Positions 6,355 through 50,700 of a stretch of DNA of 64,000 nt are shown here, in pieces. Both the position numbers and the translations under genes were made by a program. Each line of letters begins with the position of its first letter. Position 1 is the stretch's first letter. The notes under the pieces were generated by a model. That model had not been told where the DNA came from. It worked only from the letters and a program-made list of their open reading frames with translations, and did not search any database. Source of the DNA: Podarcis tiliguerta (Eukaryota); assembly GCA_965153285.1 (NCBI GenBank), contig OZ229111.1; one strand, 5' to 3'.

Positions 6355-9300
6355 CCATCTTATAGTTTCATTTTGTTTTTCTCCCTTACATGGTCCTTGG
6401 CAACAACCTCTTAGAGTGCTAGTTTTTGTGGCTGTTACCTAGCTACTAAGAAATTTCATGTGAGGAATGCCACATGTGGCTTGTGTCTGGCAGGTGTGGT
6501 GTCTGTCTGTTTTGAGGGAGACAGTGATGGCTACATTAACCTGGTAGCATACCCCTACGTGGAGAGTGAAGCCTTGGAGCAGGAAGATGTTCCAGAGAGG
6601 GACCAGCCGCGTCGCAAACACTCTCGCAGAAGCCTCAACAGGTCTGGCAGTGGCAGTGAGCACAAAGAGGAGAGAGCTGGACTGGCCAGTGACACATCAG
6701 AAAGGTACCATGTATTTCAGTTGTTTTTCCTTAGTTCAGACATAGCTTTTCAGAAGTTGCTTCCCTTAAACAACATTTCACTCCCTTTTTTGGCAAAATG
6801 TTCCCCAGTAAAGATACTGTAATCTTGTACATGCTCGCTGGACATCGATTTGCTGAGACCCTAACAATTATGCAAAGAAGGCTCTCATACTGCAAGTATG
6901 AGAAAGGTGCAGAATGTCCCCCTCTCCTACAGAATTACTCTTGCAAAGCAACTAAATTTAGTAGCCCAAATGCTAATCTCTGTTGTAATCTAATTCCCAG
7001 CAAAGCTCTTATTTGTGATACCATACTGTGCCAACAGCTTCCAGGACACGAAGAGCCTCAAGAGCTGGCATTCAGATGTTCCATTTCAGATGCTAGATGG
7101 AAATAGCAGCGTGAGTTCTGAAAAGATCACATTTAACCCGTGGAGTCTGCGTTGCCACAAGCAACAGTTGAGCCGCATGCGCTCAGAGTCCAAGGAACGT
7201 AAGCTCTACAGTATCCTCCCAAAGGCATAGTGTATACTGACTGCATGCTCACAAGGTCTTTGTTGGGGACTAAGAGGGGTGGCTGACTGCCACTGTCATC
7301 TGTTTGTTTTGGGAGGCAGTGGAAGAGTGCGCCTTCGGGGTGACTGACACCCTGCCAGTAAACCCGGCTTGGAGCATTTTCATCTTTAAAAGACCTACCC
7401 TGCCCTGGTAGGCTGGATTGTGAGTCGGCATAACTAGTGTTTTTCTGTGGCCTTCAGTCTATGGTTACCAGATTTTTTTCAATGAATCTGAGGACACCTT
7501 TTTGCAGCAGCCAAGGGGTTAAAAAACAGTAGCATCCGGATTATTAGTAGGGAGCATCATTTTGTAAACATATGTAGTTTCCATGGCAACCAGAGCCAGG
7601 TTCCTTGGTTATGGATGGAGGGTGGGGGGGGGCAAAGTTCAGCCCAAGTGCCTATCAGCTGCTCCGGGAGGCTGTGAGTGACCAGGGGGCGGGGTGCAAG
7701 CGTAGTTTGGGCGCGTGCTGCTTGCTGCCTGGGGCTCGCCATGCGCACATAGACATTGTCAAAGCTGCCGACGCTGTAACAGCCGCCACTCTCTGGGCAT
7801 AAATCGGGGGACCTTAATTAGAATCCAGGGTCATTCCGGAGACAGATTGGTGAATCCAGGGACATCTGGTAACCCTACTTCAGTCACTGTTTTCTTGTTT
7901 GGCCACCTCCTGTAGCCCAGCACCAGGACCCAAATATCAGTTCTGGAGTGGAAAGTCTGCTCTTGCTTTAAAAACAGGAACTTTTCTTCTTATGGTATTA
8001 AACTAGGCTTTCTCTTCCTTGGCTTGTCCCCTGCCCCTGAAGATGAAATGCTTGTTTATTCCTTTTATCATTGGGGTTGGAGGTTTCATATATTTGTTTT
8101 TGTTCTTCCTGTCTTGTTCTTTTTTTTTTGTCAGAGTTAAGATCTTTACCAGTGCATTTTCTAGAATGAGAGGGGTCTTAGAATTTTTGTTGAAACCAAT
8201 CAAAGCAGTTCTAGGAATGCTGAGTTTAAAGAAACAAATTTACCTTTACTGGCTCCTTAGAATTCCTTTTACTGGAGAACGTGGTACACCATTTCAAATT
8301 TCCCTGTGTGCTTGACTTGAAAATGGGGACCAGGCAGCACGGGGATGATGCATCTGAGGAGAAAGCTGCTCGGCAGATGAAGAAGTGTGCCCAGAGCACC
8401 TCGTCCACACTAGGCGTACGGGTTTGTGGAATGCAGGTACCGTATAAGCTGCTAGCAAAACTTCTGTTGCATGATTGATAGCCAGGGCTGATACCTTCCT
8501 GTGCAAGGGGGCGTGTAATAGTATTTGGCAACTGCTTAGAATGCAGAGAATCTCTGCTTCCTTTTTAAAAAAGCTGTGTGTGTAATTTATAATAATATAG
8601 TCTCTCTCCCATAAATGCACATTTCTAGTCTTCATAGAGAGGTTTGAAAACTTTCCAGCACTGACTGCAAAATGCTTCAATATCTGCCCATCTGTGACAT
8701 TATCCCCCATGTTCAGGTATGCAATTAAGCGGGGGGCGGGGCGGGGAGAGAGTGGAGCAATGTTTAGCAGTCATTAGCATAAAGTGATTTACAATGCACT
8801 CCTATGCAGATCTACTCAGAAGTAAATCCCATTGATTTTAATGAGGTTTATTGCAATATAAGTGGGTATAGGACTGCTGTCTTACTTCCCAGTTAGCATA
8901 GGGCTGCCCCTCGGTGTGTGGAGTTGGTGGCAAATATTACCAGCAGCTTAATAGTAAACAATCTCCATGTGTCATAGTGAGCTTCCTTAGCTTTGAACTG
9001 TGGTTAACATAGGCAACTCACCTGGTAGTTCTTACATGCTAGTGAATGGAATAGCGCTCCTTGGGGTGTAAGACTTACTCTGAGTTTATTAACCTCTGAT
9101 CCTTGAGGAACCAAGGTAGTAGAAGGCTTGGACATAGGAAAATATCTCTTTTTCTCAGATACATATATATTTGAAAACCACTAATGGGCAAGGAGAGGGA
9201 CACGGGTGGCGCTGTGGGTTAAACCAGAGAGCCTAGGACTTGCTGATCAGAAGGTCAACGGTTCGAATCCCCGCGATGGGGTGAGCTCCTGTTGCTCAGT

Positions 9301-11050
9301 ACCTGCTCCTGCCAACCTAGCAGTTTGAAAGCACGTCAAAGTGCAAGTAGATAAATAGGTACCACTCCGGCGGGAAGGTAAACGGTGTTTCCGTGCGCTG
9401 CTCTGGTTTGCCAGAAGCAGCTTAGTCATGCTGGCCACATGACCCGGAAGCTGTATGCCGGCTCCCTTGACCAATAAAGCGAGATGAGCGCCGCAACCCC
9501 AGAGTCGGCCACGACTGGACCTAATGGTCAGGGGTCCCTTTACCTTTACCTTAATGGGCAAGGATGAACAGAAGTTTCAACAATCTTGAAACCGTATGGG
9601 GCTCTCTTGTTCAAAACGGGTGGTGACACCTTGCACAAAGAAAGCACAGAACATCTGCATTGGTCAGGGTGTCAGTTAGGTGTCCCTTGCTTTGAGTGTT
9701 GTAAATACTCTCCTGTTGGTTTAGCATGCCTTCATAGCATGGATGCTGGTGCCCCCTGCTGGATGGTGGTCATTTGAAATACGTATCTTGCTTTTATTAA
9801 AATATCCTACTAATTTTACTGACAGCCATGATTCTGCATCAAGCTGCATTTGGACTTATTTTGAAGGAAATGTTGATTTCTGTGACTTGAGCCACCTTGA
9901 GTCCCATCAGGAAAAAAAGGCGGGGTATAAATAAATGTAATATTAATTATAATTTTGCTCAGGGTGTTTTATTCAACTACAAGGGTGCTCCAAACAATTA
10001 TTGTTTAACATGAGGCATTTAGCCAGCCTCGAATTTTCTTTTGGGCTACTTTATCCAGCAGGGTGTTATACAGTGTCCAGTTATACTGTATCATATTTAG
10101 GAAGGAAGTTGAAGAGACTTTTCTCTTATATGGGAGTACCCAAGCTTCCACCCATATCTTAACACCTTGCCAGCATAATGTACAATATTTCAGAATTCTT
10201 TGAGGATACAACAAAGGTATACTGCTGAAGTTTGCCATTTTTACTTTGGCTGCTAGTCCACTTTTTCCTCTTTAAGTGTGCTTGAGTCCTGCTCCACTTT
10301 GGTTGTTCTGACTCTGGAATGTGTCCTAACCTATGGAGAACCGAGTCCTTGTAATGTTTTAATTTGGCACAGCAGGGACTAGAACTAGTTTGATGCTTCT
10401 TTTTTTAACAATTCTCATGACGATGCAAAGGCTTCCATGAGCTACTGCAGAAAAGCATAGCTGATCATTACTGCTTTGTAGCTTCATGCAGTACACGTTT
10501 GACTGTTCTTTGTAGACTAATACATGACTTTTTTCTATCATAGGTATATCAGCTGGATACAGGCCATTATTTGTGCAGGAATAAATACTACGGCAGAGGT
10601 CTTTCCATTGAGGGTTTTCGCAATGCCCTCTACCAGTATCTGCACAATGGAGTAGAGCTACGAAAGGACCTGTTTGAGCCCATCCTTAGCAAACTGCAAA
10701 GCCTGAAGTCTGTCCTGGAGAGGCAGGCCTCCTATCGCTTCTACTCCAGCTCCTTGCTCATCATCTATGATGGGAAGGACAACCGGTCGGAGACATATAT
10801 GGAGCGCAGGGCAGAGATGCGCCTGAAACAAGTGGACATCTCTCTCCCAGAGAGCCTACAAGATGCCAGCAGCACAGAGGCAGTCAGTTTCCAGCCCAAG
10901 GTAGATGTACGTATGATAGACTTTGCACACAGCACATTCAAAGGCTTTCGAGATGATCCCACTGTACATGATGGCCCTGACATGGGGTATGTGTTTGGAC
11001 TAGAGAGCCTTATCAACATAATGGAACAGATGCGGGATGAGAACCAGTAG
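3546..11050 (+). CDS. IP6K1: Inositol hexakisphosphate kinase 1, join(3546..3768,6494..6704,7038..7210,8261..8436,10544..11050), 1290 nt, 429 aa
   Basis: N-terminus [17 protein letters not shown]...[25 protein letters not shown] (PxxxDxKxG), SSLL and MIDFAH kinase motifs, C-terminus EQMRDENQ*. Exon lengths 223+211+173+176+507 join in frame with GT-AG boundaries. The non-coding first exon was not identified and is probably upstream of the window. Confidence 0.97.
3835..3863. repeat. (AAT)n microsatellite
   Basis: About 9-10 AAT units, followed by a LINE/SINE-tail-like sequence. Confidence 0.9.
6310..6350. repeat. (AC)n microsatellite
   Basis: About 20 AC units. Confidence 0.95.
6494..6704 (+). 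CDS. IP6K1: IP6K1 coding exon 2
   Basis: ggcag|GTGTGGTG; [21 protein letters not shown]...DTSE; donor gtacca at 6705. Confidence 0.96.
7038..7210 (+). CDS. IP6K1: IP6K1 coding exon 3
   Basis: caacag|CTTCCAG; FQDTKS...[25 protein letters not shown]; donor gtatcctc at 7211. Confidence 0.94.
7211..8260 (+). other. IP6K1: U12-type (minor spliceosome) GT-AG intron of IP6K1
   Basis: Donor GTATCCTC (U12 consensus RTATCCTT). Branch-like CCTTTAC at 8243-8249 with the A about 12-13 nt from the acceptor TAG. No long polypyrimidine tract. Joining gives the in-frame LY-K-FLLLEN. Confidence 0.8.
7460..7877. mobile_element. Non-autonomous hAT (Blackjack/Tip100-like) DNA transposon
   Basis: TIRs TATGGTTACCAGAT ... 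ATCTGGTAACCCTA with an exact 8-bp TSD CTTCAGTC at 7452-7459 and 7878-7885. Confidence 0.85.
8261..8436 (+). CDS. IP6K1: IP6K1 coding exon 4
   Basis: [30 protein letters not shown]...GVRVCGMQ; donor gtaccg at 8437. Confidence 0.96.
9197..9551 (+). mobile_element. Sauria SINE, full length
   Basis: tRNA-derived head (GGTGGCGCTGTGG A-box, GGTTCGAATCC B-box), GTGCAAGTAGATAAATAGGTACC body, (ACCTTT)n tail; 13-bp TSD TAATGGGCAAGGA at 9182-9194 and 9552-9564. Confidence 0.92.
10544..11050 (+). CDS. IP6K1: IP6K1 last coding exon
   Basis: atcatag|GTATATCAG; [18 protein letters not shown]...DENQ*. Confidence 0.97.
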   Translation, partial: VYQLDTGHYLCRNKYYGRGLSIEGFRNALYQYLHNGVELRKDLFEPILSKLQSLKSVLERQASYRFYSSSLLIIYDGKDNRSETYMERRAEMRLKQVDISLPESLQDASSTEAVSFQPKVDVRMIDFAHSTFKGFRDDPTVHDGPDMGYVFGLESLINIMEQMRDENQ

Positions 11051-17102: not shown

Positions 17103-17222
17103 CTAGTAGCATCTTTGCACCAATCTGCATACAACAGTGCTATTCCTAAGAAATGTGCCAGGTTCTAATGCTTGGAAAACGTGTGTGTAGGAGAAGAGGC
17201 TACTATAATAACAGCCATCCAC
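17103..17222 (-). pseudogene. NICN1: NICN1 exon 6; ancestral stop absent, with a 26-aa extension
   Basis: tttcag|VDGCYYSSLFSYT-HVFQALEPGTFLRNSTVVCRLVQRCY*. Confidence 0.8.
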
Positions 17223-17476
17223 CTGAAACAAAAACACAAACAGTAGTCAGTTTCTGCCAAAAACACTGCACTCGCTCAAGTTTAAAGAGTAGGAGCTGAG
17301 CATTCTCCCTTTCCCTTTGTGAATCTTTCCTTATAGTGATTCCTAGGAAGCTCAGTGACGTATTTTACAGCTATCCATGTTGCAACTTAAATCCCAGCCA
17401 ACATCAGAAATCCCTTCAATGAATACCTGCTGCACTTTACTTTTCTGGTAGAAAATAGAAACAGTTGTCAACTAAC

Positions 17477-17577
17477 ATTGAAATGCCTGATCTGCACTGC
17501 TGGCTGGTTTGAAGTATCTCCGCTAGCACCCACATTTACTGGACTTCTGAAAACTCTTGGTTAGCATTGGGGAACTC
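17477..17577 (-). pseudogene. NICN1: NICN1 exon 5 with TAA and a frameshift
   Basis: tttcag|EFPNANQEFSEVQ*MWVLAEILQ, then the frame shifts to QPAVQIRHFN|gttagt; recalled human GLPDPSRVSSEVQQMWALTEMIRASHTSARIGRFD. Confidence 0.85.
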
Positions 17578-18349
17578 CTGAAAGGAAGAGACTGTTGTTG
17601 AGAAGGGCAGCAATTTATCTCCTACCTGGTTCAACCACCACCCCAACAGTTGATGTGTCTCACATTACTGCTATGATTCTGTGTGAATATAGCATGTCAC
17701 ATGGGATGCAGTGTTCAGCTTCCTGAGAATGTTTTTTTTTTTCTCTTATAAGAGCAAATTTCCAAGATATACTCTGAAAGTGTGAGGGCAATGCTTGCAA
17801 AAATCTCAGAACTCAAGATTTCCAGTAGCTACAGGTTAAGGTTCCAGTAGATTGTGTGGTTCCTTAGCCTACTTACAAAGTCAGGATACATTATGCAAAA
17901 TAGAAAATATAAAGCAACATTTGAAAAATAAAATTTCATGCAAATATACATATTTTATGCAGGTTTTAGTGCAGAGTACTCACAGGCCTGCACACCATGC
18001 AGCCCATCAATAATGGTCAAGTCCAGACTAACAACTGAGCTATATGGCACACAGTTTTTTCTGGTCTTTCTACAGCTGGGGTCTCCAATTTGGTGCCCAT
18101 GCCCCCCATATATTAAATAAGGGGTTTTTGCATTTTTGTTGTGAGGCCTGTTTTGTCTTATGTTCATCTGGGGACTGTGTAGGCTTTTTGCCTATTGCTG
18201 GGGGAGAAGTTTCTGAGCATTGCATGTTCTTCCACGCAATGGACATTTTGTGCTCACAAGTTTTTTAGATTTCCAACTACATCCCTGGGTCCAGACATTT
18301 TGGGACCTCTTTTCTAAGCTAAGTGTCCTATTTTACTGACTCTACTTAC

Positions 18350-18421
18350 CAAACAAAGGTTTCCTGGCCAGACTTTGGGTGATGGATGTGGGAGTCAGAC
18401 AGAGAAACCTTTCTGCAAGTT
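18350..18421 (-). pseudogene. NICN1: NICN1 exon 4 with in-frame TGA
   Basis: ctgtag|NLQKGFSV*LPHPSPKVWPGNLCL|gtaagt; 72 nt. The stop aligns with W of the recalled human FPKWLSHP. Confidence 0.75.
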
Positions 18422-18639
18422 CTACAGTGGGTTAAAAGACAAAACAAAGTTGGGGGGGAAAGCCGCTTCTCCCCCTGCCCCTCGCCCTGGGTAGGTCAAC
18501 AAACTACTGCCAATCTTCATCTTGCAGACCAGCTTGCCTGCATGGGAAAGGGATTTCCACACATGTGTCAAACAAAATATGAACCTAATTTATGTATGTG
18601 CCCCTAAGATCAATGAGGGCTGCTTTGGAAATGATTTTG

Positions 18640-18707
18640 TAGAATCACAGAGTTGGAAGGGACCTCAAATACCAAGAAATCCAGCTTCCTTCTGATGCAG
18701 GAAATCT
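18640..18707 (-). mobile_element. CR1 LINE 3' end fragment
   Basis: TAGAATCACAGAGTTGGAAGGGACC is the reverse complement of the CR1 3' terminus. Confidence 0.6.
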
Positions 18708-18723
18708 ACAAGTTTCCACTCGC

Positions 18724-18752
18724 AGACAGACAGACAGACAGACAGACAGACA
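18724..18752. repeat. (CAGA)n microsatellite
   Basis: About 7 CAGA units. Confidence 0.9.
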
Positions 18753-19098
18753 CATACCTCCAAACCGCTTTCTTGTCTTTCCTAGTATCACAAATACATA
18801 GAAGTGGTATTGCTGGGTGCTCTGATGTAGCTGCTTGATGTTCCTGATGCCACTGCAAATCTTTGCTGATGCCATCCAGTGTGGGTAAAAGAGAGAGTTG
18901 GCCTGGCAACCATGGATCACAGCTAGGGATCTAGGTGTTGCAGAGAGAGACTAACATCAGCTAACCATCTTGGCTCCCTCTGAAGAATATTATATTTAGT
19001 CCCAGCCTCTGCTGTTAGTTCATTTGTCGTAAGACACAAGGAACACTGGCCCTGTGGATCTGGGAAAGAGGGCCTGAAGGAGATGGCAATGTACACAC

Positions 19099-19212
19099 CT
19101 CTTGGTCTCCAGGCCAGAGCTGTAGCTCTTCAATACTGAAATGCAGCCATGTTGGAGAAGGCTGCCGCAGAATCAGCCGCATGGCAATCGCCCGATCCAC
19201 ACTGCAAAGCAT
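19099..19212 (-). CDS. NICN1: NICN1 exon 3 (open, 38 aa)
   Basis: cttttag|MLCSVDRAIAMRLILRQPSPTWLHFSIEELQLWPGDQE|gtgtgt. Confidence 0.92.
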
Positions 19213-19336
19213 CTAAAAGAATTAATGTATGCTGTTAAAAAAATGAACATCTGCAACTACTGCTGACAAGACACTTGAAACAAGATGAATGTATTGAGTC
19301 ATTGCAGGTGCTGGAGTTCCTTCTGTCCATTTATGA

Positions 19337-19460
19337 AGTGGTAAGAGTGCTGGACTAGGACTGGTCAAATCTGTACTCAGCCATGAGACTCACTGGGTTA
19401 CCTTGGGAGAATGACTATTTCTCAGCATCCTCTACATCACAGGGCTGTTGTGAGGATGGA
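19337..19460 (+). mobile_element. MIR-like / Squam tRNA-SINE fragment
   Basis: GTGGTAAGAGTGCTGGACTAGGAC...CTCAGCCATG...CACTGGGTTACCTTGGG...AGGGCTGTTGTGAGGAT. Confidence 0.6.
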
Positions 19461-20255
19461 GAGAATGTCTGGCTTTATTAGCTGCCCTAAGAGCACTTAT
19501 GCTGGGGTGCAGTAAGAATCACTTCATAAATAAATAGATGCATGGATAAGCTTTCAGTTGACCAGTGCATAGTCCTGAGAGCTGTATCAGAAACCAACTG
19601 GCCTAATAAGTTACAAATGGTTGGCATTAATGGACAATATATTGTTCAAGAACAGAACTGGAAAACATTTTCAAGGGAGAAGCTCTTGCTGTAAGTTGTA
19701 TCTTCACCATTCCCTCAGAAGTTCTTAAAGCTAAAGGGATGTAGGAGTAGCTACTAATGGCACTGGCAGTCCCCATCTACTAAGTAGTGTGGGGGAGGAG
19801 AGTGGGAAATCTGGACATAAACATTGCACTTATCCCACATTAATAATTAAACTGGTACTTTTTTGAGGATGTTTAACATACAGTTCCTATAAGTGTGGGG
19901 AACTAGAGCCAGCTGTAGTGAAAAGTACAAAGGAACACAGGTTCAGAATAAAAGCTGCTTGGTAAGTAGTGCTCAAGGGGCTCAACTTTGCACTTTGCAA
20001 TGAGCACGTGCTCCCAACTGCTCCACCTCTGTAACAGCCACAGCTGAGGCATCCTCCGGTAAAAGCACTGTCTTGAAAAGGGAGCTTCGTCAGATTTTAG
20101 ATCTTGCATTTCAAGTGCAATATCAGTTACCACAGAGATTGCTCCCTAGAGAAAAAGACTGCAGTCTGCCAAGTGAGCTGTTTATAAATGAATAGAAAGG
20201 AAGCAATACACTGGCCTTTCACCTCCAGCTCCCAGGGGAGCCCGGTTATCCTAAC

Positions 20256-20444
20256 CTGATTCCTAGAGAAACAGAAGTAATCCTGGGAGCCTTCCTCTGT
20301 GTGGGGGTTGGGCATCAGGCAATAATTACGTAGGCAGGTGACCCAGCTGGAGCGGCTTTTCCTTCCCTTCTTTGTGAAGTTTTGTTGCTGCATCCGCACA
20401 GTCAAGAAAGCTGTGTAATAATTCCTGAACACAATTTCCTGTAA
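20256..20444 (-). CDS. NICN1: NICN1 exon 2 (open, 63 aa)
   Basis: ttttcag|LQEIVFRNYYTAFLTVR...WVTCLRNYCLMPNPHTEEGSQDYFCFSRNQ|gttagg. Confidence 0.92.
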
Positions 20445-21999
20445 CTGAAAACAAGGCTGTCAGTTAATTACACAGCTCCCTCTGCATAAAATAATTATTA
20501 ACAAGCAAGCAGCCTGTGCCTTACATTTGGAAAATCAAAATCAAAACAGCAACCAACTGTGCGAAACAGTAACAGCAGAACTTGATGGAAATGCTTTTCT
20601 GCTGTAACTTCCATTCTACTGGGCTTAAAATGGTGAAAACCTGGGGAGCAGGTGCTAGAGCAGAAATATCCACCCTCCAGTCACCCCAAACATTCTTTCC
20701 AGGACTTGTACCTTCGAGAGAAAAGATGGAGGGTAAGCAGTAAGAGAACACAAGGTCAGTGTTCTCAGTGTTCTACCTGAGGGCTTTTTGCTGCTGAAGC
20801 AATTTCAGAAAAATGTCGCTTGACAATTCTTAATGCTTATGTTGATAGCTGTTCAACTGAACCAGACAACTCTATGGAAGAGGACATTCTTGGGTCTACT
20901 GTTTCAGGTAGGTTGGGTAATCTTTGCTGCATTCACAAGCCAGTAGCTGTAGTGGGTAAACTGTTTTTCTTAGGACAGGAGTGGCTAATCTTCATTTTCC
21001 CATAGGAGCTAAATTTACCCTTGGCTAACCCTCTGGCTGTTGGCCAGTGGTGGGTGTCATGAAAAGTAGATGTAGCCACCCCATAGTCTTGTACACATAC
21101 TCTAGCATGCACACACACATTATACTAACAGACAGCCCCAGCCGATCCATGCAGCTCAACTGAGATAGGACACTATTGAAACCTCTCTGCAGATTAAATA
21201 ACAGATCTGATGACCAGGAAGATAGTAAAAAGTTCTGCAGGTCAGGGCAGTGGGTTAATTGTGGAGCTCGGTCATCCAGTTCTGCTTTGGAAAATAACCT
21301 GAAATATGTGGTCATTTGATTTTGAAGTTCAATATCCTGCTAATATCCTTTATCTTCTTATAGGCAAGTAAGTTTATCCACAACTGAATGATGGGTTGGA
21401 GATGGTTCTGAGAGATCAGCCTCTTGCATGAGATGTGTTATAAAGGGGGGGGGGATGAAGTAGTAGTAGTAATAATAGTAATAATTAATAATTGCCAAAA
21501 GTGTGACTTGTCATTGTACCAACACTACTCTGCCAACCGACTAGGTGGCGGTGGGGAGACATGTTCTCAGTAATACTTCCTGTGCTTTGCTTATCTAATG
21601 TACACCCAACTGCTGTTTTCCCCCTGAACTTTAGCAGTGGAGTCACTGGGGGTGGGGGTCTTGTGCAAATTCAGTGTCTCAGCATCAATTCCACATCTAC
21701 ACTGCGAAAGGCAGGGACCAATTTCACAGGCTTATTAGGAAAATAAGGAGTGACAGGTATCACTCCTGAACATGAAGTCAGATTGAGTGCTATGAAGAAG
21801 GGAGGATGGAAGCATCTCAGTGTCCCTGAGGGCCTTCCTAAGTCATTTACTGTACAATACATCTGTTATGACATTTGCTCCACTCGCACTCCCCTGCCTG
21901 TATGATGTTGTTTTTTTAAATGACATTTCTCCCTTAATATTTTGTCACTGGGAAAATGAGGTTTTCTCTTCCTCTACTATCACCATTGAGTGCTGTGTA

Positions 22000-22800
22000 A
22001 TATGCGGCGGGTGAGGTGGGTGGGCTGCTAAGACGAACAGGGCCGTAAGCTTGATGAAAAAGAGCGAGAGAGACCACGTTTTGGACGCAGAAGATCCAGG
22101 ATCCACCGGAATCTCCAACGGAAAACAACTTCAGCTTCTCGCTCCCTACTCAGGGACACGAGGGAAAGGTCGGACCAAGATGGGACTTCGGGAGGCTGAA
22201 GGCGTCCCTCGCACTTACGAAGAAGGGCCGGTGGGGAGGCAGCAGCACGTCGATCACTGACGCTCCAGATCGCCAGGACCACATTTGCCCGTCCACCTGC
22301 GCGGCGACCGCGTTTCTGACCGTGCACTGAGCAGCCTCGCGCGCCATGTCCCCTGCGAAGACCGCCTCGGCCCCGCTTCCTTCCTTCCTTCCCTCCCGCC
22401 TCGCCGCCTACACGGCCAAAATGGCGGCAGCGGGCGCGCCTGCCCACCCAGTGGCCTCTTTGGATGGGGGGGCTGCGTCCTTAAAACCCCTTCACTTAGG
22501 GGGTTGGGGGGGAGCGTTCTGGGAGCGCGCGAAACTCTCGTCCACAAACGAGCCCTGATCTGGGAAAGGAGGACGTGACGCGAAGGCGTTCGAAATCTCC
22601 ATGGAAACGACCGCGGTTCGGTCCTTTGTCCGGGAAGGGAGAGTAGGCCGGAAAGGCTATTGGAGGTTGCGGGGAATTCCCGCCCGCCTATCACGTTGCG
22701 GTGTTCGAAGTGCGCATAAAAGTGCGGAAGCGCGAGCCGGCGCTCCTTTTACCTGGCGGGAGGGGGAATAGGCGGAAGGATACAGCGCTATTCGAATTCT
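22000..22800. promoter_or_regulatory. CpG island / NICN1 promoter
   Basis: High GC and dense CpG. YY1-type GCCGCCATTTT on the minus strand at ~22398-22408, E2F-like GCGCGAAA at ~22527-22534, TGACG at 22576, RFX X-box-like ATCTCCATGGAAAC at 22595-22608, ETS CGGAAG sites. Confidence 0.85.
22219..22347 (-). CDS. NICN1: NICN1 exon 1 (open, 43 aa)
   Basis: gacATGg context; MAREAAQCTVRNAVAAQV...SVIDVLLPPHRPFF; donor gtaagt. Confidence 0.85.
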
Positions 22801-23689
22801 CAGTACAGTACAGTAAATACGGCTTGAATTGCGCTCTTTGAAGCGGCATTTTATGAGGACAGTTTATTCGTTTACTCAGGAGAATGTATAAACCGCTTAA
22901 TAATAATATAAACCCTATAAGCGGTGGACATAAAAACAAAAAGACTGTTATCAATGAAAAACAGATAAAATAAGCAAATGTTCACACACATACACACATA
23001 CATATACAGTATATATGTGCTTGGATAGGCTTTCACATATTAGCGTATGTTACACAGTTACTAAGTTCAGTGCTGGGGTAATTTATTTTGGAAGGTGGCT
23101 TTTGGGGGAAGATTTTAGTCACACAAAACAACCCTCACTCTCAAATCTTGCCCCACCCCATTCTAACTGGGCAATGGCAGGTTCTGCTCCTGCACACAGG
23201 TTTTTTGTGTGCTTTCCTGACTGCTAAAGGATCCTTGAGAATCCTCTGCTTGAGACTGTGGAAAGCTATGCAGAACGAACAGTTTTGGACAGCAGACCAA
23301 TGGCCTGAATGAGCATAAAGACAGCTTTATAGAAAGTAGGGTTATGCCACAATCTGTCAACCTTTAACATGGTGCAAAACTCACTACTGTTGCTGCTTTG
23401 GTGCCACTAACACGGCTACTGGAGTGCGTCACTGAAGTACTGTGGACTGTTCTTTCAATCCCAGGAAAGGCTGGCAGTGAAGCTGAATCAAGAGGAGGAG
23501 GAAGGAAGGCATGTTAAGTATTTGTGTAGGAGGAGGGAAAAAGAACTTCCCAGAGATGTCTGCTTTGTTAAAGGCCAACTAGACATTGCAGTCCTTCAGC
23601 TGGCACAGTAATTTGCACCTCTGAAACCCAAAGCACCCTGTTTCAAAGATGATGAGATACATTAGACTACTGCAATGCACTTTGCATGG

Positions 23690-42410: not shown

Positions 42411-44798
42411 TTAAGGGGGGACGTAGGGAGGTGGAGACCTGTATGGGGTCATGTTCTTCGGACGGGAGCCTTTGCCCTCCATGGGTGCTGTAAAGGGAGG
42501 GGGTGGCTGGTAGGGCGGTGCGTTGGGGTCTTCGTCTCGCAGTGGCGTGTACTCTCCTATGGTGTCTTGGTTGAGCGGGGTGGTTTCTGGCATATTCTGA
42601 TTTGGGTACTCTGGGGGCGGGAGAGGGGCTTTCTCCTCCTGTAGAATCAGCGGCATGCTGGAGGAAGGGGGAGGCTTGGAGTCATCCAGCTCATCGGCAA
42701 AGATGATGGGCACTCCCTTCTTGATAAAGGTGGCTTGGTCTTCTATGGTGAGCTTGCCTTTTCTCTTCTTGCGATAGCAAATCATAGCAATGATCCCAGC
42801 AATCAGCAGGATTGCTGCCACCACCACAGCGGGGATGACCGTGTGGAGGTACACATCGTCTTCGCTCGTCTTTTCTGGATCCCGCGGAAGCACAACTGTA
42901 GGCGGTGCCGGTGTAGGAAGTCCTTCTCTATAGAAAGGAATAAACTGAATGCGTCCGCAGCTACCAGCACCAATAACGGAAATATTCTTAGCCGGGAACT
43001 CTGGCGCTAAGGCATTCTTGAAAGCGTGGCTTGGCTTCCCAGAATTATCAGCAATTTTTCTGCTCATGGTGCGAATCATCTCTTTGGGGCATGGATCCAA
43101 AGGCAGAGTATTGTTTGTCCATTCAACCACAATGGAGCCGTTGACAATGTTTTCTATGGTAATAGTGCTACTGTTTCTGTCTCCGAGGGCAAAAGCCAAC
43201 TTCTTCACCAACAAAATTTTCTTATGAATGTCATTGACAACTGTAGTATAGTCTCCCTCTAATGCGGCTTTAAATTTAACGGGAGGCACCTCGTCGGCTC
43301 CAAGACCATGGACAAATATTTCAAATGCATCCACTGTTGAAAGGCCCCCTTTGTCTGTGGCATGCATGAAAAATTCATGCCTGCCTGAGTGTGTGCGATT
43401 GGGTAGTCCATACATTAGCTGACTAGTGCTATTGAACTGCACCCACGAGTTTTCTTCCAACGGCTTCTCATCTTCTAGTTTCATGGTCAACTGCAGTTTA
43501 TCAGTGGTGGTATCTTCCTTGTCATAGAAAGTGTCTGAAGGTATCTTGAGTTCAAAGTAAGTGCCCACCCACGCATCCACCCTGTCAATGTGGTTTTTCA
43601 GTTCTGGCGGATCATTGGGCACACGGGGAGTTCCAACTGTAGTGGTGCGTATGCGAGTTGGTGGCGAAACTCTTTCTGGTGGAATGAAAGGCGATTTAGT
43701 AGTCCCGGGAGTCTTTGGAGGTCGAGGAATTTTGGTGGGTCTGGGAGTTCTTCGTGTCGTGCTCGTATCGGTGGTTGATGGTGTGGACGGTTTTGGCGTG
43801 GTTCTTTTTGGTTTCTTTGTTGTGGGCGGTGTAACTGCTGCAGTAGGTTCAACTTGCCCAGTCACTGTTGGCCGGATCTGGACAGGGGTAGTAGAAACTG
43901 CTTCTATCATTCTGGTTGGCTGAATTGGTCCAAGGGTTGGTGTCTGAACAATGGCACCTCTTGTTCTCATTGTAGCTGTGGGTTTCCTAGGCAATGGAAC
44001 AGGCTCTCTTACTGGAGGAGCTGTTGTTTCAGTGGGAGGTGCAATGGCTGGGGAGGTGGGTGTAGGAACAATTCTAATTGGCGGTTCTTGGAGGGCTGTT
44101 GTCGGAGGTCCAACAGCAGTCACAGGGGTTGGTGTAGCATTAATCTGCCGCCTTATTCTCTTTGGAAGATTAGGCTTCTTGTTCGCAATGTGCCAGCCAA
44201 CCACGGGGTAGCCAAGATGAGCAGACATTGTACCTTCCTTAGCTGGAGATTCAACATTGCTTATGTTTGGGACACTATTCTGGCTCAAAGAACAGCCTAG
44301 TTTCCAAGATAGTAAGGCTCCATTTTCCACCACTTTCTTTGCGTTCCCTGGGCCAGCCATGAAGGCTGACATGTCAAAGAGTCTATTATTTACAACGGGA
44401 ACCAATTTCATGTTATAAAGTTCCACTTCTGAGAAGGTTTTCATTCGGTTTAAAAGTTCAATCCTCTGCTTTGGTGTCATTTTTGTTAAGTCAGCATCCA
44501 AAATCACAGTCAAAATAGTGACTGGTTCCTCTGCGCTACACACAAACGGTGCTACTTCATTCACATCTTGTGAAGCCACCCGTACCGACTGAGGTTCATT
44601 ATGATCTTCTGGGTGAACCTCAATGGAAAAGACATTGGTGGTTTGGGGCACATAGCTTCCATTAGATACCAGATGCATTGAATTCACTGAGATATAATGA
44701 ATGCCTTTATCTGTATCAAGCGGGAGACCTTCCAAGGTGCTACTCTCTGGTTCCCAATGCAACCAAGAAGGCAAAGTTTCTTTCCCAGCTTCGGTAAT
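42411..44798 (-). CDS. DAG1: DAG1 large last coding exon
   Basis: tctctttcacag|[15 protein letters not shown]...PPPYVPP*; 2388 nt. Confidence 0.99.
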
Positions 44799-47700
44799 CT
44801 GTGAAAGAGAAAGAAAGAAAGAGTCACAGGTAGTTACAACATTCGTTAGAAATAAGTATAACAGTAAACTCTGGTCTTTAAAGTTTGTGCAGCAGGCGTT
44901 TAAGAACCCCTCCAGCAAGTACACATGGAATGTAAATCTTGAGCAGTAGCTCAGCTTAGGTCAAAGAGAAAGAAAACAACCAAGTTAATAAATTAAAACA
45001 GGATTGAAAATGGACACTCACTTGGTTGCCTAGGGCCTAGGCTGAGCCCAAGTCACGTACAGGTGACTAGGTAGAGAAACTTTTGTTAAAGGTAATGCTG
45101 GCTCTTTTTGCTTTTTGACTCAATAATTTTATTGATTGATTGATTATATTCAAAGGAGCCCAGGGTGGTAAAACAAGTGATAAAACCATAAAAACATCTT
45201 CAAAACAATTTCAAGACAGATGCAGATGGGTAAAAAATTAACTGAAAAGGCTTGTTGAAAGGGGACGGTCAAATAGGTACCAAAAGGTTTTTCCTAATAA
45301 AAAGAAAACACATAATTGAAACTCTTCAACTATCAAATTTGAAAGTGGTACTTAAGTCATGCACTCAGTGTGTCTAGTGTGTTCCAATGTAGACAGAGGA
45401 CCCTGATTTTTCACTGCTTCTTTACAGTATGCCCAGCCATTTTCATTGGGGCAACATGAGCGAACACAAAGTTCTACCAGAAAAGTGGAAAGATACGTTC
45501 TGTGCCAAAGGGCCACCAGGAGCCAGAAAGAACAAGCAAGAGTCCCCTTTTAAGCTTCCTGCTGGTGGTTCTGTTAGACCAACTTTATTGCTTCAAATAT
45601 ACATAATTGAAACACTCTAGAAAAAGTTTTTGCAGAAACTTAAGGACACCAGTTAAGGATTCAAGTGTACTAAGGTCTCCTGAGACATTTGTATTCAGGA
45701 ACAGAACACTTGATTATATACTTTCTCATAAGTAACTCTGTTGCATGACATGCAGCAGTGGCTAGTTCTCAGAGTCCAATTACATATATGAATGTATGCT
45801 CAAAATCCTCTGGCCTACTTTAGGAAGTGGAAACTTTATGTAAGAAAAAAAGAAAAGAAAAAAGCCCTCCCATATGTCAAAAAAGGATCTTATTAGAAGT
45901 CACTGCACCTAGTTCCTCCTCTTTGATTTCTGTTCCTTATTTCTTCCATTTCCCCTCAATTATATAGCTTTCAGTTATAATCCTGCATTTCTTGGTGTTG
46001 TGGATAGGAAGGAAGGAAGGAAAAGAGGCATGGATGAAACCTGTATACTTTTGTTGGTTTCATGGGAAGCCATGGGACCCAAAATATCAGTTAGCAGACT
46101 GTATGTTTACTGGGATCTTGCTTTTTCTATAGCCATTTGTTATCAGAGTAACTATGTGATAGCATGCCAAGCTGAGTTTTCCTTCTTCAAAATAGATGGG
46201 AAAGCTATATAAAATCTATTTCTGTGCGAATTCCTGTATGCTTTGAAACCAAGAGAGTCCCAGCAACCATCCTGCCTAGCAGGAGGAGGAGGCACCATTT
46301 TGGTTCCATTTCAGGCAGCAAAACATTTTATGACTGCTCTATCTGTGATCTTTACAGTGTATGGTGCACCTTCAGTATTAAAATAATATTTTAAAATAAG
46401 TAGCAATGTTGATTTGGTGTCTAGAAACCGTATCCAACAACAGGGTCATCTTATTTTATTGAGGTTTGGTTTTTTTGCATTCCAATGTATTTTTTTTTTA
46501 TTGGGGTTTTGTTTTTTGCATTACAAGGTATTCTGAGCCCATGAGTAGAATCTGGGTCTTTCTAGGTACAGTTCCAAATGACTTTGCTGCAGTCTAGTGC
46601 ACAGCTGTGATTAAGCTCTCAGAGTTTTTCTAAAGGTCTGTAGAATTCATATATATTTCATGATTTGCCAAAACTCAAATTTATACTTTGCCGCCATACA
46701 GCAAAAATGGATCCATTGCATATGTACTGTACCTCCCTCCTCTTTAAAAAAAAAAAGAAAGCAAAAGGGGAAACATAATAGGTGAACAGAAAAAATAGGT
46801 GAACAAAATAATAATAATACTACTCCCATAACAGATAGATATCCCAATCCCAACATGTTTCAGACTATGCAGTCATTTACTGGGGAAATATTCAATGTAA
46901 ATAATAGTAACTCAGTTGTATCTGCCTTAAGATGGTTCACATTTAACTAATGTGATACATGCAAACTGAGCCTAAATTATGAAAATACTCTCTCATTCTG
47001 GCAAATTGCAAGTATTGTTTAGCCCTCAGAACAGCTAAAGTTGAGGAAACAATTACATTTCAATATCAACAACATTATACAACACACAAACACATTTTAC
47101 AAAAGGAACAATTAAATACTTTTTTTGGAGAAAAATTACATGAATCACTACAATAGATAATGGTTTAGATTTAATTTAGATAAGCTGATTGCGACCAGCA
47201 GTTTTGATTTTATTTTTGGTAAGATGAATACCACAGATAGGTGAATGGAAAAGTTCGTTTTCTCAGAAAACTTACAGTGCAATCCTTTATGTGTCTACCC
47301 AGAAGAAAGCCATTTTCATTTTACTCTATAAAAGCAGGTTGCAGCCTGAGTGTAACACTTTTGTCCCACTGACATCAATGGGAAAATTAAGCAAATGCTA
47401 AAATTCATGAGTTAAAAAATGTTTACTTCTGGCCAGATCATTCCCTGTTTTTCTACAAATACTGCCAACCACCTGAAGGTGCAAACATCTCAGTAAGCAA
47501 AATGCTATCTATGCTAGCTCCTTCTGTCTTGGGTCCTTGATATTAACAGCTTTCTCTTGAGTAGTTAAAAGTGTTTGTGAACATTCTGGGATATCACAGC
47601 AAGGCAGCCCCACTGAGAACATCTTCAGTCAGGGGACAGTATCTGCTAAGTGCTGAATATACTGCTCCCTTTTGAGGATTCATGTTTTTTTAAAAAAATC

Positions 47701-50700
47701 CATTTTAAGAAATGCCTTTAAAATTATTATTGTTATTGTTATTATTACTCACAACCACTATTAACATGAATTTTTAAGTAAGGAGAAATTTCGAAGTGTG
47801 TGCCCAATTCAACAGCAGTGATCTGAGTGAGGCCAACTAGTGAATTGCTGAGGCAAAGTCTTCCCAGTGCATAGCTTACATCCTTAGATCTGAAACTCTC
47901 CATTGCCGCTGGAGCTCTACTCTGCCTTTTATCTGTGACAGACTTCGGGAAACAGAAGCAAGAAAGCCAATGAAAGCTGTCAGAGTGCCCTGTGGGCACT
48001 AAAGCTGAATACAGTGCTGCCCCGCAAGGCGAAAGAGTTTTCCGTTTTCTGAGTTGCTTCACAAGACGGATTTCCCTATGGGCTTGCTTCGCAAGACGAA
48101 ATGTCTTGCGCCTTTTTTTTTTTAACCGCCAATGCATTCCTATGGGAAACCGTCAATACACATTGGTGCTTCGCAAGACGAAAAAACTCGTAGAACGAAA
48201 AGACTCGCAGAACGAATTAATTTCGTCTTACGGGGCACCACTGTACTAGGAGAATGAATCCCCCATGGTTTCCAAGTATTAACATTATCACTTGAGGGGT
48301 GCAAATGATTTTTTTTTGGGGGGAAGCACTTTGGTACTAACTCAGCCCAATACAATAGTTAAGAACAAGAAAGGAACTATGATTTGCAGGTATCTAGTGT
48401 TACATGTGAACTGGATCAAAGACAGATACACACCTTCAATTTCTAATTGATTAATAAAGCCAATAAATAAATAAATGACAACAAAAACAACAACATACTA
48501 TTTCTGCTTCAGCTGATTAGTACTATTTTCAAGAAGTATTCAAATCTGAGGGACAAAGATGAGTAATATTTGCCGCCCATCTACTTGTCACTCTGTGCTT
48601 CAGATGCATCTGTGTGTCAAGGGACTAATTTTCTTTATGCCGATTTCCACAAACAAACAAATCCCATATACAGTAATTGCATCCTCACACATAGTAAACT
48701 TTGCAAGCAGTCAGACTATGGCTTTGACAGCCACACTATTTTTACTAAGATTTCACATACAAATATAAACCCAAGAAACACTTTTCTAGTCATACCGCAT
48801 ATATTGGCCAGAATATGTAGTGGAATCTAGAAGAAATCCCATGGTTAAAGCCTCACTTCGCTGTGTACAGACAAGTGGCTACATTAATTCCTAAAAAGTG
48901 CATAGCTGTGTTTGTGATATTGCCTCCCCATGCTATCTTAGCAGAATAGAAAGATATTCAAGCCTAAGATGACTACAGATGGATAGATGAAAGAAGGCAG
49001 AAAGAGAAAAGAAGCTAAAAGGCAGAGAGTCAGGTCACTAAAACCTAGGCAGATTGCATGATTCTCAGATTATCATATCAAGACTCCTATACAGCTGGCT
49101 ACTTTTAAGAAAGAACTTTTACCGCTAATTTTGTTTTTCTGAAAACTTATAGCTCTGAACACAAACTAATAAGGGTTTGTTTTTGAAGGATACAGTCCTC
49201 TCAAAACAAGAAAGGAGAGGCTTTGAAAAGCGTGCTATTTGCATATTTGAAAGCTATTGAAGAACTACCGTATTTTTCGCCCTATAGGATGCACTTTTCC
49301 CCCTCCAAAAATGAAGGGGAAATGTGTGTGCGTCCTATGGGGCGAATGCAGGCTTTCGCTGAAGCCTGGGGAGCGAGAGGGGTCGGTGCGCACCGACCCC
49401 TCTCGCTCTCCAGGCTTCACGCACCTCTCCGCAAGCAGCAGGAGCCCAGCGCTGGGCTCCTGCCGCTTGCGGAGAGTTGCCTGCATGCTGAAGCCTGCGC
49501 GCGCTGAGCTCAGCGCGTCCAGGCTTCGCGCACCTCTCCGCAAGCAGTGGGAGCCCGGCGCTGGGCTCCTGCAGCTTGCGGAGAGTTGCCTGCATGCTGA
49601 AGCTCAGCGCGTCCAGGCTTCGTGCACCTCTCTGCAAGCAGCGGGAGCCCGGCGCTGGGCTCCCATGGCTTGCAGAGAGCTGCCTGTTCTGGGGGCTGGG
49701 GTCGGGGGAAGCTCGGGCCCCGTGCCTGGGGAAAAAATATTTTTTTCCCCTTTATTTCCCCCACAAAAAAACTAGGTGCGCCTTATGGGACGGTACGTCC
49801 TATAGGGTGAAAAATACGGTAACTGAAAAATTGCAATGTTCACCATGCAAGAGAATCAGGTTAGTCAGTTACACCAGAAAAAGCCAAGCATTTTTGTCTC
49901 TCTCAGTCACCATTCTGCTTTCATCCATTCAGTTGTCTAGTGAAGTCACCAAACCTACATCTTCCTCCTCAAGACATTGTTTCTGCCACACACTGAAATG
50001 ACATGCAGACAAACTTGTTCAACTGTTAACAAGCATATTGCCTCCCTGCTTTTGATTGCATAAAAAGCCCTAGATACAGTAAGCAACAAGACTTAGGGAA
50101 TCTATTATACCAGCTTTGGAACAGCAGCATTGGCTACAGGCCCTATCCAAGCACAATTCAAAGTAGACATCCCCAGAGACCATCCTCTTGAGCATGAGCT
50201 ATTCAGAAATGCCTCAGCGACCCGACTCCATGTTCCCTGCCAAGTGAAGTAAGGAAAGTGGTAACCTGAGACACTCAAACCTTGTTACGGAGGTCCCTTC
50301 CAAAGAGGTTTGCTTGGTGCTGCCTTTTTATTTTTGGCACCAAGTGCATACTTTAAGAAGGTCTGGGCAAGGGACATTGTAAGAAACCTTTCATATATTT
50401 TGTTCTGATTTACTGGTTTTACTGCTCAAGTGACTGCTATTTTTATTGATCTAGGTTTGTATTGGTTTCATGTAAAGCTACATGTAAGGGATGCGGGTGG
50501 CGCTGTGGTCTAAACCACTGAGCCTCTTGGGCTTGCCAATCAGAAGGCTGGCAGTTCAAATCCGCACAACGGGGTGAGCTCCTGTTGCTCTGTCCCAGCT
50601 CGTGCCTACCTAGCAGTTTGAAAGCACACCAGTGCAAGTAGATAAATAGGTACCGCTGTGGCAGGAAGGTAAATGGCGTTTCCGTGCACTCTGGCTTCCA

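What the first reader, a model, noticed from the sequence alone, without database searches (positions are those of the whole stretch)
17103..22347. NICN1 with an open 5' half and a disabled 3' half: unitary loss, decaying duplicate or truncated isoform
Seen: exons 1-3 are open (144 aa). Exon 4 has TGA where human has Trp (18397-18395), exon 5 has TAA where human has Gln (17538-17536) plus a frameshift (101 nt vs 105 expected), and exon 6 lacks the ancestral stop. All ten splice sites are canonical. Known: NICN1 is a conserved subunit of the TTLL1 tubulin polyglutamylase complex. Inference: several independent lesions argue against a single sequencing error, and their restriction to exons 4-6 suggests selection may still act on the N-terminal domain. 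Full splicing would give a 152-aa product and an NMD substrate.
Basis: partly seen in the sequence, partly recalled or inferred. Interest (0 to 1): 0.8.

Follow-up and report, generated by a model that had tools for sequence, protein, structure and literature searches.

The report
Lizard-specific NICN1 duplicate with rewritten tail
This is not the lizard's only NICN1 gene breaking down. It is an extra, lacertid-specific copy that kept the folded front half of the protein, lost the original tail, and is now spliced through a new exon so the old tail exons are read in a different frame.

Summary
Exons 1-3 are open. Exon 4 has TGA at 18397-18395. Exon 5 has TAA at 17538-17536 and is 101 nt long. 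The ancestral stop is gone, and all ten splice sites are canonical. A second individual's contigs carry the same letters.

The interpretation needs changing. The gene is the lacertid paralogue that RefSeq calls "nicolin-1-like". It is annotated in five lacertid species, and each also has an intact 220-aa nicolin-1 on the same chromosome. Unitary loss is therefore refuted.

Spliced contigs from two related species join exon 3 to an unnoticed 173-nt exon (18930-18758), and exon 4 directly to exon 6. That shifts the frame. Exons 4 and 6 are read at +1, both stops are bypassed, and the window encodes an open 244-aa product.

Exons 1-3 encode the whole beta-sandwich domain. They keep 49 of 57 conserved NICN1 columns (p=2.5e-5). 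The old tail shows no such bias.

Whether the protein still functions is unresolved. dN/dS could not be computed.

The parts
22000..23000 (.). CpG island over exon 1 and the promoter
   Evidence: GC is 0.62-0.64 and CpG observed/expected is 0.9-1.3, against 0.05-0.25 along the rest of the gene and 0.26 for the whole window.
22219..22347 (-). Exon 1, 43 codons from the ATG at 22347
   Evidence: Open frame with a GT donor. It is 91-93% identical to the Lacerta and Podarcis nicolin-1-like proteins.
20256..20444 (-). Exon 2, 63 codons, core of the beta-sandwich
   Evidence: Open frame with AG/GT sites. It is 95% identical to Zootoca nicolin-1-like (E=2.6e-34) and 71% identical to lacertid nicolin-1.
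19099..19212 (-). Exon 3, 38 codons, end of the beta-sandwich
   Evidence: Open frame. It is 79% identical to lacertid nicolin-1. The e2>e3 joint 20256|19212 is seen in X15.
18758..18930 (-). Exon 3b, 173 nt (57 codons plus 2 nt). It is new relative to NICN1 and shifts the frame.
   Evidence: The translation is identical to residues 145-201 of P. muralis nicolin-1-like. It has an AG acceptor and a GT donor. The e3>e3b joint 19099|18930 with GT..AG ends is seen in two runs of organism B.
18350..18421 (-). Exon 4. The ancestral frame is closed by TGA at 18397-18395. It is now read in the +1 frame (TCRKVSLSDSHIHHPKSGQETFV).
   Evidence: It is 96-100% identical to the annotated lacertid proteins in the +1 frame. 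It is identical in the second individual, X2.
17477..17577 (-). Exon 5, 101 nt. The ancestral frame has TAA at 17538-17536 and a 4-nt deletion near 17503-17500. The exon is skipped in the main form. When included, it is read at +1 to TAG at 17525-17523.
   Evidence: The e4>e6 joint 18350|17222 skips it in organisms B and C. Isoforms ending ...SSKCGC are annotated in P. muralis, P. lilfordi and Zootoca.
17165..17222 (-). Exon 6 coding part in the +1 frame (WMAVIIVASSPTHTFSKH, stop TAG at 17167-17165). In the ancestral frame the stop after SYT is lost and the frame runs on to 17103.
   Evidence: It is 94% identical to the P. muralis nicolin-1-like C-terminus.
18723..18752 (.). (CAGA)7.5 microsatellite just downstream of the exon 3b donor
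   Evidence: read laying skipped this repeat, which is why the e3b>e4 joint could not be seen.

Best explanation
The locus is the lacertid-lizard paralogue of NICN1 that RefSeq names 'nicolin-1-like'. It is an intron-containing DNA duplicate of the tubulin polyglutamylase complex subunit nicolin-1. The intact parent gene sits elsewhere on the same chromosome.

After duplication the copy kept exons 1-3. These encode the complete galactose-binding-like beta-sandwich, and selection preserved its conserved residues. The ancestral C-terminal tail (exons 4-6) was released from constraint. It picked up a TGA, a TAA, a 4-nt deletion and loss of the stop.

The gene is still transcribed from a CpG-island promoter. 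It is spliced through a new 173-nt exon (3b) between exons 3 and 4. Because 173 is not a multiple of three, exon 4 is read in the +1 frame and the TGA is bypassed. Exon 5 is usually skipped. Exon 6 is read at +1 to a stop in the last exon. In this window that gives a 244-aa open reading frame: the NICN1 domain plus a roughly 100-residue, lineage-specific, probably disordered tail.

Shown:
- It is a paralogue.
- The lesions are real.
- The splice joints exist in relatives.
- The frame is open.
- The N-terminal domain was under long-term constraint.

Inferred:
- The protein is made.
- The domain still binds a partner in the polyglutamylase complex without the ancestral tail. TBC1D19 is predicted to contact NICN1.
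For: Identity as the paralogue:
- The best hit of exon 2 is Zootoca 'nicolin-1-like' at 95% identity.
- The 90% cluster holds nicolin-1-like models of five lacertids. A separate cluster holds their intact 220-aa nicolin-1, on contigs of the same length.
- The window holds only this one NICN1-related locus.
- A note from this scan places AMT 123 kb before the window.

Lesions are real:
- Contigs of the second sample, X2, are identical over exons 4-6.

Splicing:
- Joints 20256|19212, 19099|18930 and 18350|17222, all with GT..AG ends, occur in RNA-type runs of two related species.
- They match the RefSeq isoforms.

Open new frame in the window:
- Verified exon by exon.

Selection on the domain:
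- 49 of 57 conserved NICN1 columns are kept, against 42 of 81 variable ones (p=2.5e-5).
- The old tail keeps 17 of 32 against 19 of 34 (p=1).
- N-terminal versus C-terminal retention at conserved columns differs at p=0.001.
- There are 0 disabling lesions in 144 codons, against 3-4 in 73.

Domain boundary:
- AlphaFold models place the whole beta-sandwich in exons 1-3 (pLDDT 85-93). Both tails have low confidence.
- The fold matches the XRCC1 N-terminal domain and other galactose-binding-like domains.

Promoter:
- A CpG island lies over exon 1.

Open-frame chance:
- The chance that e3b and e4 (+1) are both open is about 1.5%.
Against: - No dN/dS could be computed, because no DNA of the relatives was available.
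- Among the six lacertid sequences, the N-terminal domain varies about as much as the new tail: 15 of 133 against 11 of 82 variable columns.
- Avoidance of conserved columns within lacertids is not significant (4 of 56 against 11 of 77, p=0.27). Present-day constraint is therefore unproven.
- The end of the tail is not conserved. The TAG stop is present in Podarcis and the window but absent in Lacerta and Zootoca, and there are indels nearby.
- The RNA label of the runs is a guess. Their contigs also carry much intron, so many transcripts are unspliced.
- The e1>e2 and e3b>e4 joints were not seen.
- No RNA run of the window's own species was available.
- Two of the three frames of exon 3b are open, which weakens the open-frame argument.
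- RefSeq open reading frames are chosen as the longest possible.
- There is no peptide evidence.
Confidence: 0.65

Rival explanations
1. Transcribed but functionless duplicate. The copy was kept by selection for a long time after duplication, which explains the intact domain. It is now a neutrally drifting, still-transcribed pseudogene. Its 244-aa frame is a by-product of one cryptic exon plus the annotation pipeline's choice of the longest frame.
For: - Crown-lacertid variation is the same in the domain and the tail, and conserved columns are not significantly spared.
- The tail end differs between genera.
- The tail is predicted to be disordered, with pLDDT 26-44, and has no relatives.
- Many contigs retain introns.
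- The paralogue evolves far faster than the parent. Lacertid nicolin-1 proteins are nearly identical, while the nicolin-1-like proteins differ at about 4-8% of residues.
Against: - Across six species there is no stop or frameshift in the 144 domain codons. The only indel is one in-frame codon in Zootoca.
- All splice sites are intact.
- The CpG island is retained.
- The stop of both isoforms lies where nonsense-mediated decay is avoided.
- e3b and e4 (+1) are open in all six species, against a 1.5% chance of both being open.
Confidence: 0.28
2. Unitary loss of NICN1 in this lizard. The only NICN1 gene of the genome is being disabled from its 3' half.
For: The lesions are real. The whole assembly could not be searched here.
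Against: - All five annotated lacertids have a separate intact nicolin-1.
- The window gene is only about 62-66% identical to it, but 92-100% identical per exon to the nicolin-1-like proteins of Podarcis muralis.
- It forms its own clade (100/100 support) on a 0.6 substitutions-per-site stem.
- AMT, the usual neighbour of NICN1, lies 123 kb away and not beside this gene.
Confidence: 0.03
3. Assembly or sequencing artefact. The stops and the 101-nt exon 5 are errors in an otherwise intact gene.
For: None found.
Against: - An independent sample's contigs are identical over exons 4, 5 and 6.
- Annotated proteins of five other species read exon 4 in the +1 frame. That frame has Asp where an intact Trp codon would give Gly, so the ancestral TGG is gone there too.
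- Podarcis also lacks the ancestral stop.
Confidence: 0.01

Closest known systems
RefSeq 'nicolin-1-like' genes of lacertids: Podarcis muralis LOC114591484 (XP_028574406-10), P. raffonei XP_053233309, Lacerta agilis XP_032997750, Zootoca vivipara XP_034961813-15, and the P. lilfordi CAI5766985-87 models
   Same: This is the same gene, an orthologue. Per-exon identity to the Podarcis muralis model is 92-100%. The exon set is the same, including exon 3b, the +1 reading of exons 4 and 6, and the alternative ending in exon 5.
   Different: The window species has its own substitutions: PPHRP in exon 1, Lys in FTKK, and His and Trp in exon 3. It shares the early TAG stop with Podarcis, not the longer Lacerta and Zootoca tail. 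These models are automatic predictions. The full-text search found no paper describing the gene.
NICN1 (nicolin-1), subunit of the TTLL1 tubulin polyglutamylase complex (PMC13376646; bioRxiv 10.1101/2024.10.01.615885)
   Same: The six ancestral exons keep the same lengths and order. The N-terminal beta-sandwich retains 86% of its conserved columns, including the FxNYYTAF, CLMPNPHTEEGSQDY and LILRQPSPxW motifs.
   Different: The conserved tail is destroyed in its own frame and replaced. That tail comprises FPxWLS, the VSSEVQQMWVLTEM helix, and the RIGRFDVDGxYDxNLLSYT end. The gene is not the one-to-one orthologue. It evolves much faster, and it is not beside AMT.
Gene duplicates that gain a new C-terminus by frameshift or exonisation (a general phenomenon, cited from memory and not checked here)
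   Same: The duplicate keeps a folded domain. Its 3' exons are reused in another frame after the insertion of an exon whose length is not a multiple of three.
   Different: Here the frame change happens at the RNA level, through a new exon. It is not a frameshift mutation in the coding DNA. The old-frame lesions are still visible beside it.

Membership tests
NICN1 one-to-one orthologue (TPGC subunit nicolin-1) | N-terminal beta-sandwich domain with the family's conserved residues | tested here: met
   41 of 47 columns that are at least 90% conserved are kept. The domain is modelled confidently. Hits to NICN1 across vertebrates have E-values down to 1e-45.
NICN1 one-to-one orthologue (TPGC subunit nicolin-1) | Conserved C-terminal tail ending ...RIGRFDVDGxYDxNLLSYT-stop, readable in frame | tested here: not met
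   TGA, TAA, a 4-nt deletion and loss of the stop. Only 14 of 24 conserved tail columns are kept, no better than variable ones.
NICN1 one-to-one orthologue (TPGC subunit nicolin-1) | Single copy per genome; groups with the NICN1 of its closest relatives | tested here: not met
   Five lacertids carry a separate intact nicolin-1. The window gene's clade is separate (100/100 support) with a 0.6 stem.
NICN1 one-to-one orthologue (TPGC subunit nicolin-1) | Physical association with TTLL1, TPGS1/2, LRRC49 and TBC1D19 | not testable with these tools
   This needs co-purification.
Lacertid nicolin-1-like (LOC114591484 group) | At least 90% identity and the same exon structure, including exon 3b and the +1 reading of exons 4 and 6 | tested here: met
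Lacertid nicolin-1-like (LOC114591484 group) | Spliced transcripts with e3>e3b and e4>e6 junctions | tested here: met
   The junctions are seen in contigs of RNA-type runs of organisms B and C. They were not tested in the window's own species, for which no RNA run was listed.
Unitary pseudogene | No intact copy elsewhere in the genome | tested here: inconclusive
   This is not met in five related species. This assembly could not be searched as a whole. AMT lies 123 kb upstream according to a note from this scan.
Processed (retro)pseudogene | No introns, poly(A) tract | tested here: not met
   All five ancestral introns are present with canonical sites.

The most novel reading that the evidence does not exclude
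The paralogue is a working, lizard-specific variant subunit or decoy of the tubulin polyglutamylase complex. Its NICN1 beta-sandwich would still dock onto the complex, for example on TBC1D19. The ancestral partner-binding tail has been swapped for a de novo tail, built from a newly exonised intron segment and out-of-frame reuse of old exons. That would change or damp polyglutamylation in the tissues where it is expressed. It would be a dated, comparatively young example of a de novo coding sequence grafted onto an old domain.
Probability: 0.3. Interest if true: 0.6.

Novelty: new member of a known kind. Interest (0 to 1): 0.4.

Why it matters
The report removes a false lead. Lacertids have not lost NICN1, a conserved subunit of the tubulin polyglutamylase complex.

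What remains is a tidy natural experiment in how a duplicate is remodelled. The folded domain is kept under selection. The old tail is visibly dead in its own frame. A new exon shifts the reading frame so that the same DNA now encodes an unrelated tail.

Both the fossil frame and the new frame are readable in one locus, across several sequenced lacertids. That makes the locus a good case for testing whether de novo tails acquire constraint. If the protein binds the complex, it could also help separate the roles of the NICN1 domain and its tail.

The gene is already predicted automatically in related genomes, so the locus itself is not new.

Tried and rejected
Searches that gave nothing:
- Pfam scans of exons 1-3 and a PDB sequence search of exon 2 gave no hits. 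NICN1 has no Pfam model and no solved structure by sequence.
- The word-index protein search with exon 2 alone found nothing, because of its length window. The all-against-all representative search was used instead.
- The full-text paper search found no paper on nicolin-1-like.

Tools not available:
No genomic DNA of the Zootoca, Podarcis or Lacerta loci, or of the true NICN1, could be fetched.
- As a result, dN/dS and the origin of exon 3b (is it homologous to NICN1 intron 3?) were not tested.

Tests that did not resolve the question:
- A crown-lacertid constraint test on protein variation was underpowered (p=0.27).
- AU tests could not date the duplication. A lacertid-specific origin gave p=0.27 and a pre-crown-squamate origin gave p=0.32; neither is rejected.

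Rejected outright:
- Assembly error, unitary loss and processed pseudogene (see rival explanations).

Handling of the spliced model:
- Exons were searched and translated one by one by reference.
- The annotated orthologues (P0239, P0234 and others) stood in for the full-length protein.
- In one script, per-exon pieces were laid side by side only to count variable columns.


Full report
**1.

| Exon | Coordinates | Length |
|---|---|---|
| e1 | 22347-22219 | 129 nt |
| e2 | 20444-20256 | 189 nt |
| e3 | 19212-19099 | 114 nt |
| e4 | 18421-18350 | 72 nt |
| e5 | 17577-17477 | 101 nt |
| e6 | 17222-17103 | 120 nt |

- Exons 1-3 give 144 open codons.
- In the ancestral frame, exon 4 has TGA at 18397-18395.
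- Exon 5 has TAA at 17538-17536 and is 4 nt short. tblastn with a real nicolin-1 splits it into two hits in different frames.
- Exon 6 reads ...SYT-His and runs on to 17103 instead of stopping.
- All ten splice sites are AG/GT.

The lesions are not assembly errors. Logan contigs of a second sample of the same species (X2) cover exon 6, exon 5 and exon 4. Their only differences lie in introns or downstream (records 22-24).

**2. It is a paralogue, not the lizard's NICN1**

Pfam, the PDB sequence search and the word-index search gave nothing for single exons. Exon 2 was therefore sent to the exhaustive representative search.

- The top hit, at 95% identity, is a 250-aa protein. NCBI names it 'nicolin-1-like isoform X2 [Zootoca vivipara]'.
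- A follow-up search and cluster look-up showed two separate gene families in lacertids.
- The 'nicolin-1-like' models come from Podarcis muralis (LOC114591484), P. raffonei, P. lilfordi, Lacerta agilis and Zootoca vivipara.
- The same five species also have an intact 220-aa 'nicolin-1', on contigs of the same length.
- The intact proteins are almost identical between genera and end in the canonical ...RIGRFDVNGSYDLNLLSYT.
- The window's exons are 92-100% identical to the Podarcis muralis nicolin-1-like model, and somewhat less to Lacerta and Zootoca. They are only 43-79% identical to lacertid nicolin-1.
- The window holds no second NICN1-related locus.
- A note from this scan places AMT exons 123 kb before the window start in the same genome (untested here). 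AMT is NICN1's usual neighbour.

In this window the gene lies between IP6K-type kinase exons on the plus strand (8.2-11 kb) and the 3' end of DAG1, whose large exon is at 42414-44960 on the minus strand.

Unitary loss is therefore refuted for the family, and almost certainly for this species. The whole assembly could not be searched here.

**3. How the gene is actually read**

The RefSeq models do not use the ancestral frame.

- After exon 3 they insert an extra exon (IPSCDPWLPGQ...KKAVW).
- They then read exon 4 as TCRKVSLSDSHIHHPKSGQETFV and exon 6 as WMAVIIVASS....

The same reading is possible in the window.

- Exon 3b is 18930-18758: 173 nt, AG acceptor, GT donor.
- Its 57 codons are identical to the P. 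muralis protein.
- Because 173 = 3n+2, exon 4 is read at +1. The TGA is no longer in frame.
- With exon 5 skipped, exon 6 is read at +1 and stops at TAG 17167-17165.
- Counting exon by exon, with the two split codons AG|A = Arg and TG|G = Trp, this gives 244 codons. That is the length of the Podarcis protein.
- If exon 5 is included, it is read at +1 and ends ...SSKCGC-TAG at 17525-17523. This matches other annotated isoforms.
- Both stops lie in the last exon, or fewer than 50 nt before the last junction. Neither form should trigger nonsense-mediated decay. This is an inference from the usual rule.

**4. RNA evidence**

No RNA run of the window's species was listed. Small, transcriptome-sized runs of two related species (organisms B and C, about 2.5-3% diverged in introns) were laid on the locus. 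Three joints appear, all with GT..AG ends at the exact exon borders:

| Joint | Exons joined | Runs |
|---|---|---|
| 20256\|19212 | e2>e3 | X15 |
| 19099\|18930 | e3>e3b | X15 and X19 |
| 18350\|17222 | e4>e6, skipping exon 5 | X15 and X17 |

Caveats:
- The 'RNA' label is the tool's guess.
- The same runs hold many intron-containing contigs, so much of the RNA is unspliced.
- The e1>e2 and e3b>e4 joints were not seen. The latter abuts a (CAGA)n repeat that the tool skips.

A strong CpG island covers exon 1 and the promoter. CpG observed/expected is 0.9-1.3, against about 0.1-0.2 in the gene body. This fits continued promoter activity.

**5. Selection**

*Structure.* AlphaFold models place the whole eight-strand beta-sandwich within exons 1-3. 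pLDDT is 85-93 in both nicolin-1 and nicolin-1-like. The ancestral tail (one helix) and the new tail are both of low confidence. The domain resembles the XRCC1 N-terminal domain and other galactose-binding-like modules such as APC10 and IFT25.

*Conserved-column test.* The test uses 55 vertebrate nicolin-1 sequences (alignment A1). Each window exon was aligned separately to lacertid nicolin-1.

| Region | Conserved columns kept (at least 80% conserved) | Variable columns kept | Fisher p |
|---|---|---|---|
| N-terminal (exons 1-3) | 49 of 57 | 42 of 81 | 2.5e-5 |
| Ancestral-frame tail (exons 4-6) | 17 of 32 | 19 of 34 | 1 |

- At conserved columns, the domain and the tail differ (p=0.001).
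- At variable columns they do not (p=0.84).
- The unconstrained sites of the domain have therefore drifted about as far as the dead tail, while its key residues were held. The old tail seems to have been released early.

*Lesion count.* There are 0 disabling lesions in 144 domain codons, against 3-4 in 73 tail codons. In all six lacertid sequences the domain has no stop or frameshift. Its only indel is one in-frame codon in Zootoca.

*Present-day constraint.* This is not shown.
- Among the six sequences, 15 of 133 domain columns vary, against 11 of 82 columns of exon 3b plus exon 4 (+1).
- Conserved columns are spared only non-significantly (4 of 56 against 11 of 77, p=0.27).

*The new tail.*
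- It has no relatives outside these lacertid proteins.
- The chance that exon 3b and exon 4 (+1) are both open is about 1.5% by shuffling. Two of the three frames of exon 3b are open, however.
- Its end differs between Podarcis and the window on one side, and Lacerta and Zootoca on the other.

**6. Age**

- A maximum-likelihood tree of the domain puts the paralogue clade (100/100 support) inside squamates (98/96 support) on a very long stem: 0.6 substitutions per site, against 0.03 for lacertid nicolin-1.
- Its position within squamates is unresolved. AU tests reject neither a lacertid-specific origin (p=0.27) nor a pre-crown-squamate origin (p=0.32).
- Copies are annotated only in lacertids. 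This favours an origin on the lacertid stem, followed by fast early divergence.
- The frame change predates the Podarcis-Lacerta-Zootoca split, because all five species are annotated in the shifted frame.
- In all five, the +1 frame has Asp at the spot where an intact ancestral TGG would give Gly. The Trp codon is therefore gone throughout.
- Whether the TAA and the 4-nt deletion are shared could not be read from proteins.

**7. Verdict**

Of its three readings, only 'duplicate' survives, and with a twist. The N-terminal domain was kept by selection, and the gene is expressed with a recoded C-terminus rather than as a 152-aa truncation.

The parent protein is a subunit of the TTLL1 polyglutamylase complex (PMC13376646). 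Interactome modelling predicts that TBC1D19 contacts NICN1 (bioRxiv 10.1101/2024.10.01.615885).

A tail-swapped copy could act as a variant subunit or a decoy, but that is speculation. The main rival is a still-transcribed duplicate that has recently lost function.

The full-text search found no paper on the gene, but it is already predicted automatically in five related genomes. Interest is moderate.

Noticed in passing
window 42414-44960 (minus): This is the large coding exon of dystroglycan DAG1: 849 open codons, Pfam DAG1 E=3e-149 and the alpha-DG N2 domain. Its 3' end faces the 5' end of the nicolin-1-like gene. From memory, human NICN1 and DAG1 lie head to head.
   Followed up: partly
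window 8230-8475 and 10544-11047 (plus): Two exons of an inositol polyphosphate or hexakisphosphate kinase (Pfam IPK, E=1e-25 and 6e-36) lie downstream of the nicolin-1-like gene. Which IP6K paralogue this is was not determined.
   Followed up: partly
window about 18473-18669 and 19261-19457: High-copy interspersed repeats lie in the introns. Summed contig depth in X2 is about 11658 and 524, against about 90 elsewhere, with many loose ends at 18634-18683 and 19365-19407.
   Followed up: no
window 18723-18752: A perfect (CAGA)7.5 microsatellite, (TCTG)n on the gene strand, starts 5 nt downstream of the exon 3b donor site. It may influence use of that donor. It also blocked detection of the e3b>e4 joint.
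   Followed up: no
window 19142 and 19165 (exon 3): These sites are polymorphic within the window's species. About half of the X2 depth carries T>C at 19142 (His>Arg, the state of all other lacertids) and C>G at 19165 (synonymous).
   Followed up: partly
window 22348-22600 (minus): Newer P. muralis RefSeq models ('uncharacterized protein LOC114591484') extend the frame 86 residues upstream of the ATG. In the window that upstream frame is closed by a TAG at about 22410-22408, so the extension is not conserved.
   Followed up: partly
window 49200-50000 and 56200-56700: Several long overlapping open stretches with similar peptide content (…GKCVC.LWGECR…, …[18 protein letters not shown]…) occur on both strands at two places. 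They suggest copies of one repeat family inside the presumed DAG1 intron.
   Followed up: no
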